Positions 11,381-37,990 of a DNA stretch of 64,000 bases are shown here, piece after piece; within the stretch, counting starts at the first letter, position 1, and every line of letters starts with the position of its first letter. The stretch is from Diadema antillarum (lineage: Eukaryota), in the NCBI RefSeq assembly GCF_040938485.1, contig NW_027271741.1:558001-622000 (forward strand). The letters are read 5' to 3'. The notes under the pieces are model-generated. The model was not told the origin of the DNA. It worked only from the letters and a program-made list of their open reading frames with translations, and made no database searches. The position numbers and the translations under genes are program-made.

Positions 11381-11634
11381 TTAGATCCTATCCAAGAAAT
11401 CTAATGGATCCGCCTTTCTAATCTGATTCCTTACAAAATCTTTAATGTTGTGCCAATCCCGTCCCCGTAGTGATTTTTCACACTTAAGGCACTCTTCACA
11501 CTGAGCTTTTCCTGGTAAACTTGTTGTTTCAAAACAAGTCTTCAGTCTCTTTGCTACAGCCAGTTTCTCTTCTTTAGTCCATGGTCTCTTTCTCTTCTGA
11601 CCCCTTTCTCGTTTCGTACCTTTCACTTTGGAAC
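11381..11634 (-). CDS. SET-tyrosine recombinase gene, terminal exon: Myb/SANT-like helical module
   Basis: Acceptor TTTTTACCATTCAG ends at 11635 (phase 1, G|GT). Encodes SKVKGTKRERGQKRKRPWTKEEKLAVAKRLKTCF...PGKAQCEECLKCEKSLRGRDWHNIKDFVRNQIRK to a stop at 11381. RPWTxEE...R.W..IK is Myb/SANT-like. Confidence 0.75.
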
Positions 11635-11875
11635 CTGAATGGTAAAAACGACAAACGTTTACATTTGAATTTATCCAGCAAAAAAATGTTACTTGTAATT
11701 TCATAGGCATGAATGGCGTTCCAGGAAATGGAAAACTCATTGGCTTGCTACTGTTACTTTCAATCAGAGGTAGGTTATACATAGAGTACAAGGCTTGTAA
11801 TTTAGGCCCCAGTCCCATATAGTTAGAGAATCAACACGGCAGTCCTGGACCATACATGGTGGCTACAAGGACCAT

Positions 11876-11909
<34 letters not shown>

Positions 11910-11962
11910 ACCCCCCAGATGTCACCATCTCCCTGCACCGTCAAGCCCCAGTTCCATATATA

Positions 11963-12630
11963 CTATACAGGCCAAAAGTTTGGACACACCTTCTCATTAA
12001 AAACGTTTTCTTTATTTTCATGAGCACCCTTTCTTGTAATTACTGCTTTGAACACTTTTGGCATTCTCTCAATGACCTTCAAGAGGTAGTCTCCTGAAAT
12101 GTTTTTCATGTCACAGGTGTGCGTTACTAGGGTGAATTACACTGTATACAGTGGATTTTTTTTTTTGGTTGTTCTATCAGCAGGATTGGAATTATCAGTT
12201 GTGTTGTGCAGAAATAAGTTTAGTACACAGCTGACAGCCCTATTTGACAACTGTTAAAATTCATATTATGGCAAGAACTATAATGAGCTTTTAGAAAAAT
12301 GAGTGGTCATCATTACTTTAACAAATGAAGGCCAGTCAGTTCAGAAAACTGCAAAAACTTTAAATACAATGTATGTCCCCAAGTGGAGTCCAAAAACCAC
12401 CAAGTGCTACAACGAAATTGGCACACATGAGGAAAGACTCAGGAAAGGAAGACCACGAGTCACTTCTGCTTCTGAGGATAGTTCATCCGAGTCACCAGCC
12501 TCAGAAATCGCAAGTTAACAACGGCTCAGATCAGAGACCAGGTGAATGCCACACAGAGTTCTAGCAGCAGCCCCATCTCCAGAACAACAATTAAGAGGAG
12601 ACTGTGAATCAGGCCTTCATATGGTAAAAT
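11963..12630 (+). mobile_element. Tc1/mariner transposon 5' fragment (one TIR plus frameshifted paired-like DNA-binding region), inside an intron of the SET-YR gene
   Basis: TACAGGCCAAAAGTTTGGACACACC Tc1-type terminus at 11966. From ATG 12268 a broken frame reads VIITLTNEGQSVQKTAKTL..SPSGVQKTTKCYNEIGTHEERLRKGRPRVTSASED..IRVTSLRNRKLTTAQIRDQVNATQSSSSSPISRTTIKRRL, including the GRPR AT-hook motif. No DDE domain and no right TIR seen. Confidence 0.85.
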
Positions 12631-33729: not shown

Positions 33730-34460
33730 AGTAAAGATCATTACCAAAAGAAGATATTAAATAAACTCAAAAGGTTCATATGCTACCATTGCAAGGATTA
33801 GGGCAAGTCTAAGATAATGCACATATTACGTATGGGACACTCAGAGACTTTTATGACCTGAAAAATAGTGTTAATGGCCTTTGATCATATTGGACTTTAT
33901 CATGTTGACTGATCTAGGAGGAGAATCATGTAAAAAATGGAGAAAATGACCTTGACAACTACAGATTTTAGAAGAGAAAATATGTGCCGTTACATAAGGG
34001 ACCAGGAAAAACTTTGTTATTATGAACATTTTTTCAACCTCAAAACTCTCTGAAAGTAGTTCATTCTATACAGTCTGTAACTTCTAAGTCAGCATGATAA
34101 AAGTCACAAAACTCAAGTTTCAAGTCATGAGGCATAAAACTGTTATTACAGGTTCTGATTTAAGACAGATATAACATGTTACATATGGGACAATTACGTA
34201 GTACATGGGACACTTTGTCCCACATTCGTTTATTGTGTGGACAATCATGTTTATGGGTATTTTGCATAATTATTGAAGTAAAATCAGTTGAAATTACTCA
34301 AATACTGATCCAGATTGTCAAGGGAACAATATTCCCCAAATATCTACCATCATAACATATTTAATCTTATTTCATATTTCTACTATGACCAACCTGAGTA
34401 TGCATGCCCTGCATTTTTATCAGAATATAGTTACTACCAAAAAATGGAAATCAGTGACTT
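33730..34460 (+). pseudogene. Possible decayed 3' end of a non-LTR retrotransposon
   Basis: Broken frame ...MAFDHIGLY...CRYIRDQEKLCYYEHF...KTQVSSHE...LSREQYSPNIYHHNIFNLISYF loosely follows the KLRTY...K.R.SSH...LREQY pattern of LINE ORF2 tails. Recognised by eye only. Confidence 0.3.
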
Positions 34461-36176
34461 GTGTTTACGATATGTACTTCCATTGATGAAGGGCAGTTTT
34501 CCATTCAGTTTCCATATTTAAATCTTGATAACATCACCCATCACTTTGTTTCACATGTAATCTATTTGCCATTTTGCATCTACGCTATGTGGCTGACTTT
34601 TTTCTTTGCTATCATAGAAAATACACAAGTAACTTGGAACAACAAAGTAATATCTATGGCATCTTGGATTAATTCCAGTGGCCAGAAAACCCAATACAGG
34701 GCAGCCAACTTTGAATACTATCATTTGAGAGTGAGGTTATACGAGATTCCCATCTAGGCCATGACTCACTCTAAAATTTTGTTTCATTTGCATGCACGAA
34801 AAATATTGATCTCCCTTTCTATTACCCCACGAGCTCCTTTGATAAAACGTAGAATCCAGGAGAGAGACACTTACATATATCCTCTTTTTTTTTTCTCCTT
34901 GAAAACTTACAAAGTACATTACCAGTTGGAATCTGTAGTATGGACATGTATGCATGTTTGATTATTTACATCTATAATTAAGGACTGTTCTGTAATGACT
35001 GTGTAAATTAGGTTTGAGTAATTTAAGAATCATAAACTAGGCAAATTAACACACTTCCCGTTCAATGTACTTGGATTATAATTTGCTTACATGGTACATA
35101 ATGTATCCACTGGCTTGTACACTCAAACCTAATGTACACATGCAATAGAGGACAGTCCTTAGTCAAAAGCTCACAATTCACATCCAATCTACCAAGATAT
35201 ATACTATACACTTGTTTGATCCATTATACACTCAAAACTAATGTTCTGGTCCATGCCAAAAAATAGTTCTGCATGTACAAACCAAGAGTTTCTTTGCTGA
35301 AAAGTTAAAACCAGGAGAGATCGAGATGGTTATCCCCCCCCCCCCCCTTGAACACTTCCATGTACTACAAGTTAATGGAATCTGTAGGATATATACATTG
35401 TACCATGCATGTTTGATTACAAATTTTGTAATCGAGGACTGTTCTCTTATGCATGTGTACTCAACTCAGGCTTGATAGAGTACATTTGTAATTTGGATAA
35501 ACTAGGCAAATAAGCATACTTCCCATTCAATGTAACAATGCAGATTGTGATTTGCTCGCATGGTATCCACATACACTCAAACCTAATGTTTTAGTATAAG
35601 CCAAAAATAGGTCTATGAACCCAAGAGCTTCTTTGATAAATAGTAGAATCAAGGAGAGAAACAGCTATCCTCTTTATTTCCCCTAGAACACTTACATTTT
35701 TACCAGTTGAAATCTGTAGTATGGATACCGCGCATTTACAATGCATGTCATTGATTGAGGACTGTTTTTATTTCATGTGAACGGTATGTCAGGTTGTAAG
35801 TAGTTTGGATAAACCAGGCAAATAATAATAATAATAATAATAGTTGTTTTGGATATAAACTCCAAATGTTATTGTCCAAGAATGGAAATTTTCTTTGCCC
35901 AATTGATCGAATAAACACACTTCCCATTCAATGTACTTTTAGATTACTATTTACTTGCTTGGTATCCATATGATGTGCACTATATGCATATTAAACCTAC
36001 AGTAGTAATGTACACATGCAATAGAGGAGAGTCCTCGGTTACATGTAAAAAAAATTACACACACACTTCACATCCAATCTTCTTCTTCTGTAGAAGTGCA
36101 TCCTTCACAGTTGAAGATCAGCGCACTGCAGAGTGGTATGCATACTGTAATGGCACTTTGGGAGACCGGGGACGTA

Positions 36177-36325
36177 CCGTTGCATAAAAGTTATAATTAT
36201 GGTAACTTTGCCATCCAGCGGTAACTACCATGGCAACAATACTCAACAGCCAACTGAAATCAAGATTTCCATAGATGAAGTTACCACTGGATGGCAAAGT
36301 TAGTATAGTAACTTTTATGCAACGG
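36177..36325. mobile_element. MITE with CCGTTGCATAAAAGTT TIRs
   Basis: CCGTTGCATAAAAGTT at 36177-36192 and AACTTTTATGCAACGG at 36310-36325, plus inner arms AACTTTGCCATCCAG / CTGGATGGCAAAGTT. Confidence 0.8.
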
Positions 36326-37758
36326 GCCACGGGCCCTCAAGGGCCAATCATAATTTACATACAAAGTAGAGTGAACAATAAATTGTGCAGAAATATGTAC
36401 GGTATGTGAAGTGCTGCTAGAACTAGAAGATTACTGTATAATTATACAATATACTTGCTTGGTATCCACCTCTACACTCAAATCTAAGGCCATGACCATC
36501 GTTCCCTTTCTTCTGCCTTACTGAATACTATAAATAGACTATTTTCAGGGCTACTATTCATTTTTATTATCATTTAAATGTAAAACTTAGACCTCTACAG
36601 AAATTACTCCTCATGTGGGGGCCATAAAACTCCCGGCCCTGTCACCCTAGTGGCAGGGTTGAATCTCACATCTCTGCCACTTTAGGTAGGGGATGGTTAC
36701 TTGCACAATGGTTATTGTAACTCTAAGGAAGTGCATACCAGCTACTGTAGGGAGTGTAGGTAGGCCTACAACTTCTGTATGTGTACTATAGTATCCTCGG
36801 GTCTAGTTCACAAAAACACAAGCAAAGAAACAAACAAACAAAAACAAAGTGGCTTAACCCCAACTTAATTAAGTTAAAGAATATGACAATGACAGAAAAT
36901 GAGGACAGTGTACATACACAACTAGAACTTTCTACACGTATAACGTTAGATCTAACAATAGGCCTATGTAGTATGTGACATGTCTCCTTATTTGCACACG
37001 TAAGGAAGTGCAAAATCACACTCGACTTCCAAATTCTCAGTTTTTAACGTGATTAGGAAATAGAGACTTTATGTCCCGACACCAAATCTATGCAGCTAGG
37101 TTTCTTGTAGCTATCTAAGTTAAAACTAACTATGCATTGTTAGACTTGAGTCTATAAAGTATTAGGCACTTATGAAGGATGTATGGCGGGTGACTGCTAG
37201 TGCTAATGTAACGCTAGTGCTACTACCCTGGACCTACTCAGTATAATTATTAGATCAGATTGTGTGAGCGAAGATATGATCCAAAGTTTGCCAAGGCGGC
37301 CGAAATTACCCTCACCTACTCTAGCAGTATCGAAAAAAAAAAAGAGAGATCAGAGAGTCCTCAGTTACAGGTAAAAAACCCACACATTTCACATCCAATC
37401 TTCCTCTTCTGTTGTAGTTCTAAGTAATGGTAGTGGTAACTACCATGGTAGTTACCACTGGTAGTTACCATGTCGTTCAAGTATATTTAAATATCTAGAG
37501 ACCAGACCTAAAGACTAAAAGTCTATAGAATACTAACGTTACAGATCTATTTGCTTGGCAAACCCGGAGATATAATTAAAGGCTAAAAGAGGCCGCGGAG
37601 ACACCTACTAGACCAATAATAAACATATACTGTATTGGCATTGCCACTGCACTCGTGGCTTGCACACAAATGAATACAATGAACAATTATAAAAACTAGC
37701 CCTCAAAATGTGATACTGCAGTTATTTGTGCTACCATAAAATAATATGCCTCACTTAC

Positions 37759-37990
37759 TTTGTTGCATCTCGAGTAGATTCCACTCCCTACTTCTGTTCC
37801 TTCTTTTAGCCGGTCTCGTGCCGTGGTTTGGGCGGCCCTCGGATTTGTCAAAAGTGGCTATGCCTGCTTTGCATGCGCAAAATTGCAGCGCATCGTGGCC
37901 GGGGCCGGCCGTAAACCCCCGTATGCTAGCAGCTAGGCCAGCCTTTGCCAGGCGTACGCGTACGTTTCCAGCAGCCGCGCCGTCATGAGG
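37759..37990 (-). other. Candidate first exon (GC-rich 5' UTR plus ATG CAA CAA A) of the SET-tyrosine recombinase gene
   Basis: Perfect GTAAGT donor at 37758. ATG at 37768 leaves a phase-1 end that joins the 26221 exon in frame (MQQK-KDAGSS). The segment is locally CpG-rich. The 5' boundary is unknown. Confidence 0.4.

What the first reader, a model, noticed from the sequence alone, without database searches (positions are those of the whole stretch)
11381..37768. Hidden spliced gene fusing a SET8-like methyltransferase domain to a tyrosine recombinase, zinc fingers and a Myb/SANT-like domain
Seen: five well-supported minus-strand exons (20895-20778, 19824-19665, 18718-15070, 13295-13125, 11634-11381) plus two candidate upstream exons (37768-37759, 26221-26166) join with matching phases at GT-AG sites into about 1450-1470 aa. 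Domain order: SET, 39-aa acidic repeats, two Cys/His fingers, YR (R in NRKRSGE, K in GKKQR, TRLR, MGH, NFY), acidic linker, Myb/SANT-like. Established: animal tyrosine recombinases come from DIRS/Ngaro retroelements (with RT, absent here) or Crypton DNA transposons, and PR-Set7/SET8 writes H4K20me1. I recall similar uncharacterised SET-plus-integrase proteins in fish and invertebrate annotations, so the family may be catalogued, but I know of no mechanistic description. Inference: an intron-containing Crypton-like element, or a domesticated derivative, that couples recombination with chromatin marking of its target or of itself.
Basis: partly seen in the sequence, partly recalled or inferred. 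Interest (0 to 1): 0.88.

Follow-up and report, generated by a model that had tools for sequence, protein, structure and literature searches.

The report
Giant jumping gene with histone-methylase recombinase
This sea-urchin DNA holds a 35-kb jumping gene, recently inserted into a CA-repeat, whose single intron-split gene fuses a SET8-type histone methyltransferase domain to the tyrosine recombinase that presumably moves it, a combination found in many animals but, as far as I could find, not described in print.

Summary
The seven minus-strand exons exist, with GT-AG borders and matching phases. In this copy the large exon is broken by a net 16-nt loss in the acidic repeats (17957-17979). The same seven exons give an uninterrupted 1477-aa ORF in a sister copy, and a copy in another Diadema setosum assembly is open from SET through the recombinase.

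Domains:
- SET is closest to KMT5A/SET8.
- The recombinase has no Pfam hit, but its predicted structure matches Cre/XerH/XerD and the catalytic R-K-R-H-Y residues are conserved.
- The C-terminus is a weakly supported homeodomain/Myb-like three-helix domain.

New here: the gene lies in a 35.4-kb mobile DNA unit (2839-38241).
- There are three ~99% identical copies in this genome and a fourth in another individual. All sit at unrelated loci, inside (CA)n tracts, in one orientation.
- Two loci have empty alleles on sister haplotigs.
- Introns are retained and no reverse transcriptase was found, so it moves as DNA.
- At least 38 related recombinase loci here have SET exons upstream.
- The protein family has about 13,500 cluster representatives and I found no published description.

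Verdict: a Crypton-like tyrosine-recombinase transposon, a new variant, not a domesticated gene. The role of SET is inferred only. The scan had not reported this family before.

The parts
2813..2838 (.). (CA)13 tract of the target microsatellite at the left junction. On the right side only one CA remains before the flank CGCACACATACACC.
   Evidence: the empty allele on contig C499 has (CA)11 at this place
2839..38241 (-). The mobile element: 35,403 bp of unique sequence, from TACATGGTTATGGCG... to ...GGCGATCACATACG. The gene is on the minus strand.
   Evidence: ~99% identical copies on C2133 and C981 with unrelated flanks; exactly three copies of each terminus in the genome; a fourth copy at another locus in the NCBI assembly; empty alleles
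2856..2866 (+). Left subterminal motif AACCGTGGACC
   Evidence: the motif AACCGYGGAC[C/G] occurs only at the two ends of the element (5 hits, 0.56 expected)
38070..38224 (.). Right subterminal cluster of four AACCG[C/T]GGAC[C/G] motifs: 38070+, 38153+, 38181-, 38214-. They form inverted pairs.
37759..37768 (-). Candidate exon 1 (ATG plus 7 nt), 473 bp from the right end. Unverified.
   Evidence: GT donor; the NCBI SET gene model extends upstream beyond window position 26675
26166..26221 (-). Candidate exon 2. Unverified; possibly 5'UTR.
   Evidence: AG/GT borders and phase fit; not conserved in homologues
20778..20895 (-). Exon 3: N-terminal part of the SET region. An in-frame ATG at 20892-20890 is the likely start codon.
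   Evidence: RNA reads fall in this depth bin
19665..19824 (-). Exon 4: SET core (GRGIFA..., EY.G)
   Evidence: RNA reads in bins 19550-19949, none in the intron bins directly beside them
15070..18718 (-). Large exon: SET C-terminal third (18520-18717), acidic 117-nt repeats, two zinc fingers, tyrosine recombinase
17094..18355 (-). Array of 117-nt (39-aa) acidic repeats, about 10 units
17957..17979 (-). Frame break of this copy: three small deletions (1+10+5 nt) relative to the C2133 copy
16442..16747 (-). Two Cys/His zinc fingers: YCPFC...H...H at 16682-16747 and VPCHQC...H.C at 16442-16501
   Evidence: beta-beta-alpha elements in the AF2 model
15071..16369 (-). Tyrosine recombinase, core-binding plus catalytic domains. 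Catalytic residues: Arg 15656-15658, Lys 15518-15520, Arg 15299-15301, His 15221-15223, Tyr 15194-15196.
   Evidence: AF2 pLDDT 81; top Foldseek PDB hits are XerH, Cre, XerA, XerD and lambda Int; conserved columns
13125..13295 (-). Exon 6: acidic linker
11381..11634 (-). Exon 7: basic stretch plus C-terminal three-helix (homeodomain/Myb-like) domain, then the stop codon
20978..35825 (.). Intronic array of degenerate ~450-bp modules in both orientations. It carries the palindrome GAGGAC-N-GTCCTC (14 exact copies) and holds most of the 25 CAATAGAGGAC-type sites (the rest lie at 2882-5706 and 36019). Fragments of common genome repeats are nested in it.
2839..11380 (.). 8.5-kb non-coding 3' part of the element, with no ORF that hits Pfam. 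It contains a nested ~235-bp high-copy repeat at about 4024-4260 and an inverted copy (5468-5720) of the left subterminal 280 bp.

Best explanation
Window 2839-38241 is one copy of a 35.4-kb DNA transposon of the tyrosine-recombinase (Crypton-like) class in a Diadema sea urchin.

Its single, intron-split gene encodes one protein of about 1450-1480 aa, with these parts in order:
- an N-terminal KMT5A/SET8-type SET domain;
- acidic 39-aa repeats;
- two Cys/His zinc fingers;
- a two-domain tyrosine recombinase;
- an acidic linker;
- a C-terminal homeodomain/Myb-like three-helix domain.

Shown here:
- The unit moves as DNA. Its introns are retained in all copies and no reverse transcriptase was found.
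- It has precise ends.
- It inserts in one orientation into (CA)n microsatellites.
- It is hemizygous at two loci in this animal.

Inferred:
- The recombinase excises the unit as a circle whose joined ends carry a (CA)n overlap flanked by inverted AACCGYGGAC sites, and it recombines that overlap with genomic (CA)n tracts.
- The zinc fingers and the C-terminal domain bind the terminal motifs and the roughly 25 internal CAATAGAGGAC-type sites.
- The SET domain methylates a histone lysine (most likely H4K20, by analogy with SET8) on nucleosomes at the element or its target.

This copy carries a frame break in the repeats. If that break is real, the copy depends on intact copies in trans.
For: Mobility:
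- Three ~99% identical copies end at the same bases with unrelated flanks.
- A fourth copy in another individual sits at another (TG)n/(CA)n locus in the same orientation.
- Empty alleles exist with an uninterrupted (CA)11 tract (contig C499) and a (CA)24 tract (contig C801).

Single gene:
- No other ORF in the element hits Pfam.

Fusion:
- A 1477-aa ORF in the C2133 copy and a SET-to-recombinase open frame in L027.
- Homologues of 1100-1650 aa with N-terminal PF00856 in echinoderms and teleosts.
- At least 38 related recombinase loci in this genome have SET exons 2-25 kb upstream on the same strand.

Domains:
- SET is closest to KMT5A (E 5e-14 against 3e-8 for the next family), with an invariant E..Y.Y motif.
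- The recombinase fold matches known tyrosine recombinases and has conserved R, K, R, H and Y.
- The C-terminal domain is conserved in more than 50 homologues and folds as a three-helix bundle.

Selection and expression:
- dN/dS is about 0.27 between copies, and coding parts diverge less than introns.
- There is low-level polyA RNA, with reads in bins that overlap predicted exons.

Precedent:
- An active Crypton recombines a short terminal sequence with a matching target (PMC9977147).
Against: - No read-level proof that SET and the recombinase are on one mRNA. The NCBI annotation splits them into a 277-aa SET gene and the 1193-aa P0001, and no junction reads were listed.
- This copy and the C981 copy are frame-broken.
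- The recombinase has no significant Pfam or PDB sequence match, and the His of the canonical HxxR box is a Thr.
- The SET 'NH' motif reads 'ND' here and in most relatives, so catalysis is not assured.
- Foldseek E-values for the recombinase are only about 1e-3.
- CA-unit counts at the junctions (13+1 against 11; 33+9 against 24) do not fit a simple fixed 6-bp overlap.
- Circle formation, DNA binding and methyltransferase activity are untested.
Confidence: 0.8

Rival explanations
1. Two genes rather than one. The element expresses a short SET protein (about 277 aa) and a separate zinc-finger/recombinase protein that starts at a Met inside the repeats, as the NCBI annotation has it. The long fused ORF would be incidental or only an alternative isoform.
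For: The NCBI D. setosum annotation splits the locus into a SET gene and P0001. In the abundant '713-aa' family, the SET C-terminal exon is a separate small exon far upstream of the recombinase exon. No junction or continuous-coverage RNA evidence was obtained.
Against: - In L027 the frame is open across the annotated gene boundary, and in C2133 the seven exons give one 1477-aa ORF.
- The last third of the SET domain and the recombinase share one exon with no stop between them.
- Full-length SET-plus-recombinase models are predicted in several species of two phyla, echinoderms and teleosts.
- The repeat array keeps its reading frame across about 10 units.
Confidence: 0.15
2. The SET module is catalytically inert and serves only as a nucleosome or H4-tail docking module. 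This would be analogous to chromodomains of chromoviral integrases, so no chromatin 'writing' would be involved.
For: The near-universal NH(S/C) motif is ND here and in most family members. No activity data exist.
Against: - The AdoMet-pocket GxG, the Asn, and the E..Y.Y catalytic and switch tyrosines are invariant or nearly so across echinoderm and fish members.
- Some holothurian members keep NH.
- Such conservation is more than a mere docking role would need.
Confidence: 0.3
3. A domesticated, host-serving gene derived from a Crypton. On this reading the duplicates are segmental duplications, not transposition products.
For: Purifying selection on the coding sequence. There is precedent in the DUF3504 genes (PMC3212892).
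Against: - Four copies have identical ends at unrelated loci, all in (CA)n.
- Two hemizygous insertions have clean empty alleles.
- Dozens of near-identical paralogous units exist.
- Two of the four copies examined are frame-broken.
Confidence: 0.03
4. A DIRS/Ngaro-type retroelement, or a fragment of a larger virus-like element, in which the recombinase is only the integrase of something bigger.
For: DIRS-type recombinase elements occur in this genome (earlier notes s1-229741 and s1-229757). Crustacean nimaviruses use zinc-finger recombinases to enter simple repeats (PMC10871703).
Against: - No RT, RNase H, capsid or polymerase domain was found in any ORF of the 35.4 kb.
- Introns are retained in every copy.
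- Both ends are defined by empty sites.
- There are no relatives in IMG/VR viral contigs.
Confidence: 0.03

Closest known systems
Crypton DNA transposons (Goodwin 2003; Kojima & Jurka 2011, PMC3212892; active CryptonF-1_cRei, PMC9977147)
   Same: A DNA element whose only enzyme for movement is a tyrosine recombinase. It has no RT and no long terminal repeats. Insertion appears to go through a short sequence shared between the element's ends and the target: CACCG/CAYCG in Chlamydomonas, CA repeats here.
   Different: - Animal Cryptons are described as recombinase-only, without a C-terminal domain or terminal repeats, and as small elements.
- This one is 35 kb with a 26-kb multi-intron gene, a SET domain, zinc fingers and a C-terminal helical domain.
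- It has subterminal inverted motifs, internal motif arrays and microsatellite specificity.
- Its recombinase does not match DUF3504.
- Its relation to Repbase's unpublished subgroups such as CryptonV could not be tested.
SETMAR (Metnase): SET domain fused to a mariner transposase in anthropoid primates
   Same: A SET lysine-methyltransferase domain and a transposon recombination enzyme in one polypeptide.
   Different: SETMAR is a single-copy domesticated host gene with a DDE transposase that no longer transposes. Here the partner is a tyrosine recombinase, the SET domain is SET8-type, and the fusion sits in a currently mobile, multi-copy element found in several phyla.
Starship / Enterprise giant tyrosine-recombinase elements of fungi (PMC10104507, PMC8092012)
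   Same: Tens-of-kb DNA elements moved by a tyrosine recombinase, probably through a circle. Language-model features place DUF3435 clusters among the nearest named families (score 0.88, a lead only).
   Different: Starships carry many cargo genes and a DUF3435 'captain' at one end. This element has one gene, and the rest is repeat-rich non-coding DNA. No DUF3435 Pfam match was found. The host is an animal.
Repeat-targeting tyrosine recombinases of endogenous nimaviruses in crustaceans (PMC10871703)
   Same: Animal tyrosine recombinases with a C2H2 zinc finger, encoded by multi-exon genes, that insert large DNA specifically into simple repeats ((TAACC)n there).
   Different: Those are 200-360-kb viral genomes and no SET domain is reported for them. 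Here there are no viral genes. Sequence relatedness was not tested.
KMT5A / SET8 / PR-Set7
   Same: Best sequence match of the SET module over the whole catalytic domain, including the C-flanking PW motif and the catalytic tyrosines.
   Different: About 30% identity, ND instead of NH, and a transposon context. Substrate unknown.

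Membership tests
Tyrosine recombinase superfamily (Cre/Xer/lambda Int fold) | Two-domain fold: helical core-binding domain plus catalytic domain | tested here: met
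   AF2 model pLDDT 81. The 37 best Foldseek PDB hits, and most of the top 50, are tyrosine recombinases; the best 34 cover about 370-450 alignment columns, with probability about 1.0, E from 9e-4 and TM by target up to 0.56.
Tyrosine recombinase superfamily (Cre/Xer/lambda Int fold) | Catalytic residues R-K-H-R-H/W-Y | tested here: inconclusive
   R315, K361, R434, H460 and Y469 (numbering of alignment A1) are invariant or nearly so. The His of HxxR is a conserved Thr (T431). Assignment is by motif and spacing, not by residue-level structural superposition.
Tyrosine recombinase superfamily (Cre/Xer/lambda Int fold) | Sequence-profile match (PF00589 or a PDB relative) | tested here: not met
   No Pfam hit for the window protein. 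Two of 24 relatives hit PF00589 at E 0.044 or weaker. One other homologue (P0117) hits at 1.5e-5, below the cut-off. A PDB profile search found nothing.
Crypton DNA transposons | Mobile DNA unit encoding a tyrosine recombinase and no reverse transcriptase | tested here: met
   introns are retained in all copies
Crypton DNA transposons | No TIR or LTR; a short sequence is shared between the termini and the target | tested here: met
   CA repeats flank both ends at 4 of 4 left and 3 of 3 right junctions. Subterminal inverted motifs exist, which is atypical.
Crypton DNA transposons | Recombinase groups with a named Crypton clade (CryptonA/DUF3504, F, I, S, V) | tested here: inconclusive
   It is not DUF3504: PF12012 finds at least 93 other loci but none of these, and hhalign probability is 0.04. 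Repbase sequences for F, I, S and V were not available.
KMT5A/SET8-type SET domain | SET fold with GxG, (R/K)xxNH, ELxYDY and the C-flank | tested here: inconclusive
   PF00856 matches the part in the large exon (E 2.5e-5) and homologues in full (E 1e-13 to 5e-18). KMT5A is the best PDB match. NH is ND. Activity was not tested.
Myb/SANT (homeodomain-like) DNA-binding domain | Three-helix bundle with conserved aromatic core; profile match | tested here: inconclusive
   No Pfam match. The AF2 helical model has pLDDT 82. VIA Z is 5.0-6.6 to homeodomains and TRF1/TBF1/RAP1 Myb domains, which is within the range of common helical arrangements. W24 is invariant and W66 nearly so.
Starship (fungal giant YR elements) | DUF3435 captain recombinase plus multi-gene cargo | tested here: not met
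   No PF11917 hit and no second gene.
DIRS/Ngaro YR retrotransposons | RT/RNase H plus terminal or internal complementary repeats | tested here: not met
   No RT in any ORF. Introns are retained.

The most novel reading that the evidence does not exclude
An active animal transposon brings its own histone 'writer'. On this reading the recombinase-linked SET8-type domain deposits H4K20me1 on the nucleosomes of the element, of its excised circle or of the target. That could license replication or retention of the circle, as tethered PR-Set7 promotes pre-replication-complex loading, or it could recruit 53BP1-type repair. The roughly 25-30 palindrome-bearing modules in the 15-kb intron would act as a binding-site array for the element's own zinc-finger and helical domains, resembling the family of repeats in a viral episome origin. 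This would explain how a cut-and-paste tyrosine-recombinase element gains copies.
Probability: 0.2. Interest if true: 0.92.

Novelty: new variant of a known kind. Interest (0 to 1): 0.78.

Why it matters
Transposons are known to read chromatin, for example through chromodomain integrases, and to be silenced by it. An active element that carries a histone methyltransferase fused to its own recombinase would be a transposon that writes chromatin.

The family is very large and is labelled only 'uncharacterized' or 'hypothetical protein':
- about 13,500 cluster representatives at 50% identity;
- 55 Atlas clusters, whose commonest phyla are Chordata and Arthropoda;
- named members from echinoderms, teleosts, molluscs, an annelid and a nemertean.

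This window gives the family a concrete, testable anatomy: exact ends, empty sites, a (CA)n target, terminal and internal candidate binding motifs, and intact and broken copies in one animal.

It also shows that tyrosine-recombinase DNA elements of animals can reach 35 kb. It offers a natural microsatellite-targeting recombinase, and it explains many 'KMT5A-like' gene models in invertebrate and fish annotations as transposon genes.

Tried and rejected
- Pfam on the recombinase, the zinc-finger stretch and the last exon gave nothing significant.
- A PDB profile search with the recombinase alignment gave nothing.
- hhalign against a DUF3504 ORF from the same genome showed no relation.
- An IMG/VR scan found no relatives.
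- Ten further ORFs of the element have no domain, and so do the ORFs of 2813-11380.
- RNA reads were too few to list a single splice joint. The DNA-derived contigs of run X15 break in the repeats, so they do not settle whether the 16-nt loss is real.
I therefore could not define the ends or target of the abundant '713-aa' and '803-aa' families, or show that their SET and recombinase exons lie in one repeated unit.
- One search used a mis-chosen interval that lay inside the element rather than in the flank. It only revealed a nested high-copy ~235-bp repeat.
- A fixed 6-bp (CA)3 overlap model fits the total CA count at the window locus (14 against 11). It does not fit the left/right split there, nor the C981 locus (42 against 24). 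I rejected it in favour of 'recombination somewhere within CA tracts, with the element probably carrying its own tract'.
- Five full-text searches for a transposon that joins a SET domain to a tyrosine recombinase, or for a microsatellite-targeting one, found none. A sixth search on Repbase's Crypton subgroup names only confirmed that CryptonV is listed without a description.

Full report
**Source.** The window is G000:C853:558001-622000 of a 1.75-Gb, 2963-contig animal assembly. The best database match of the large ORF is an 'uncharacterized protein [Diadema setosum]' at 99% identity (P0001). The organism is therefore a Diadema sea urchin. Sister haplotigs are present, so the assembly holds both haplotypes.

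**Observation.**
All have GT donors. The acceptors are AG, with a weaker AAG at exon 4.
- Exons 1-4 plus the start of the large exon read as a SET domain. PF00856 matches the part in the large exon at E 2.5e-5.
- The 3649-nt exon is not open in this copy. Two ORFs in different frames meet at 17947-17974, and the joined CDS is 4418 nt.
- Alignment with sister copies shows three small deletions (1+10+5 nt) at 17957-17979 in one 117-nt repeat unit.
- The same exon borders mapped onto the C2133 copy give a clean 4434-nt, 1477-aa ORF.
- The C981 copy is broken elsewhere and lacks one repeat unit.
- The copy in the public D. setosum assembly (L027) is open from the SET exons through the recombinase. 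Its annotation nevertheless splits the locus into a 277-aa SET gene and the 1193-aa P0001.
- PolyA RNA-seq of the species gives only 23, 3 and 8 reads from about 12% of three runs. With one negligible exception (depth about 0.1 in one run at 18950-19349), they lie in depth bins that overlap predicted exons and the other intron bins are empty. No splice joint reached the listing threshold.
- Exons 1-2 stay unverified. An ATG in exon 3 (20892-20890) aligns with the start of the S. purpuratus homologue.

**Domains.**
- *SET.* Using the S. purpuratus homologue, the best solved relatives are all KMT5A/SET8 (E 5e-14), against 3e-8 for the next family. Across 21 family members the E..Y.Y motif is invariant and the Asn nearly so. 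The usual NH is ND here and in most members, and NH in some holothurian ones.
- *Recombinase.* There is no Pfam or PDB sequence hit. An AF2 model built with 24 homologues has pLDDT 81. Its 37 best Foldseek PDB hits, and most of the top 50, are tyrosine recombinases: XerH, Cre, XerA, XerD, lambda Int and Tn1549 Int. The best 34 span about 370-450 alignment columns. R315, K361, R434, H460 and Y469 are conserved, but the HxxR His is a Thr.
- *Zinc fingers.* Two Cys/His fingers precede the recombinase.
- *C-terminus.* The last exon encodes a domain conserved at the extreme C-terminus of more than 50 homologues. It folds as a helical bundle (pLDDT 82). It resembles homeodomains and telomeric Myb domains only moderately (Foldseek E at least 1.8; VIA Z 5.0-6.6) and has no Pfam match.

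**The element.**
- Window 2813-38256 recurs at about 99% identity on contigs C2133 and C981. Homology stops at the same bases and the flanks are unrelated.
- Each terminus occurs exactly three times in the genome.
- The unique part is 2839-38241: TACATGGTTATGGCG ... GGCGATCACATACG.
- The flanks of the window copy are contiguous on haplotig C499, where an uninterrupted (CA)11 tract stands in place of the element.
- The flanks of the C981 copy are contiguous on haplotig C801 across a (CA)24 tract.
- The copy in the other assembly, about 97% identical, sits at a fourth locus. It again abuts a (TG)n/(CA)n tract, in the same orientation.
- So there are four independent insertions, all into CA microsatellites and all in one orientation, and two are hemizygous in this animal.
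- CA units flank both ends: 13+1 against 11 in the empty allele, and 33+9 against 24. This suggests recombination within CA tracts, with the element probably contributing its own tract. A fixed overlap could not be derived.
- The motif AACCG[C/T]GGAC[C/G] occurs only near the two ends, once on the left and four times on the right as inverted pairs.
- CAATAGAGGAC-type sites occur 25 times, all inside the element (about 1 expected by chance). Fourteen exact copies of the palindrome GAGGAC-N-GTCCTC occur in the window, all at 21205-31824 inside the element.
- The 15-kb intron is an array of degenerate ~450-bp modules in both orientations, with nested common repeats.
- No other ORF has a recognisable domain. 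Retained introns and the absence of RT argue for movement as DNA.

**Family.**
- At least 87 recombinase paralogue hits exist in this genome, in several families of near-identical copies.
- Comparing, at least 38 recombinase loci have SET exons 2-25 kb upstream on the same strand. These include about 25 copies of a '713-aa' family and 8 of an '803-aa' family. An '886-aa' family shows none.
- None of these loci is among the at least 93 DUF3504 (CryptonA-type) loci. A profile comparison with a DUF3504 ORF finds no relation.
- Outside this genome, SET-plus-recombinase proteins occur in sea urchins, sea stars, sea cucumbers and many teleosts. Recombinase relatives without a detected SET domain occur in brittle stars, an annelid, a nemertean and molluscs.
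- A whole-library profile search finds 13,495 cluster representatives (3,729 at E <= 1e-30).
- The ESM Atlas lists 55 clusters, all 'hypothetical protein'.
- Between the window copy and L027, the recombinase part has dN/dS of about 0.27, based on only 12 differences. Coding parts diverge at 0.4-0.6%, introns at 0.9% and the 3' region at 1.2%.

**Literature.**
- Kojima & Jurka describe animal Cryptons as recombinase-only, without a C-terminal domain or terminal repeats, and do not mention SET (PMC3212892).
- Active Cryptons in Chlamydomonas recombine a terminal CACCG with CAYCG targets (PMC9977147).
- Crustacean nimaviruses use zinc-finger recombinases to enter (TAACC)n (PMC10871703).
- Five full-text searches found no paper describing a transposon that joins a SET domain to a tyrosine recombinase, or one that targets microsatellites in this way.
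- Repbase lists a CryptonV subgroup, but I could find no description of it.

**Verdict.** The gene model is essentially right, although this copy is frame-broken. The element is a mobile, giant, intron-rich, Crypton-like tyrosine-recombinase transposon that targets (CA)n. It is not a domesticated gene. Still inferred are circle-mediated recombination, DNA binding by the finger and helical domains, and histone methylation by the SET module.

Noticed in passing
The element therefore sits immediately beside that candidate gene, and the empty allele on contig C499 lacks it.
   Followed up: partly
window about 4024-4260: A ~235-bp repeat nested in the element's 3' non-coding part has about 38 other listed matches in the genome, mostly at 87-94% identity (SINE/MITE-like). 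It was found through a mis-aimed query.
   Followed up: no
window 33795-34517 and 38545-38825: Two further common repeats. One, inside the long intron, is about 84% identical to more than 35 loci. The other, just outside the right end, has about 40 loci at about 70% identity.
   Followed up: no
G000, e.g. C26:1869036-1869452 (L051), C1106:45844-46266 (L052): The genome holds at least 93 DUF3504 (CryptonA-type) matches, mostly in 300-530-aa open frames. This second, unrelated tyrosine-recombinase family co-exists with the SET-linked one.
   Followed up: partly
G000 C211, C654, C738, C1061, C1424, C1756, C1996, C705 ('886-aa' recombinase family): A multi-copy branch of the same recombinase family with 886-aa open frames shows no SET exon on its contigs in the profile search. 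It may carry a different N-terminal module.
   Followed up: no
L027 (NCBI GCA_964275005.2, OZ188193.1:14890898-14917728): The public annotation splits an uninterrupted SET-to-recombinase reading frame into two gene models (277 aa and 1193 aa). Many 'KMT5A-like' and 'uncharacterized' models in echinoderm and fish annotations may be halves of such transposon genes.
   Followed up: partly
window 11877-11916: A run of 40 C in the intron between the last two exons.
   Followed up: no
window 2868-3149 vs 5468-5720: The left subterminal ~280 bp has an inverted, ~69% identical copy 2.6 kb further inside the element.
   Followed up: no
P0023 (Capitella teleta, 1358 aa): An annelid member of the recombinase family is named 'Tudor domain-containing protein' by UniRef instead of carrying SET. 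Pfam did not confirm a Tudor domain here. If real, the N-terminal chromatin module is exchangeable.
   Followed up: partly
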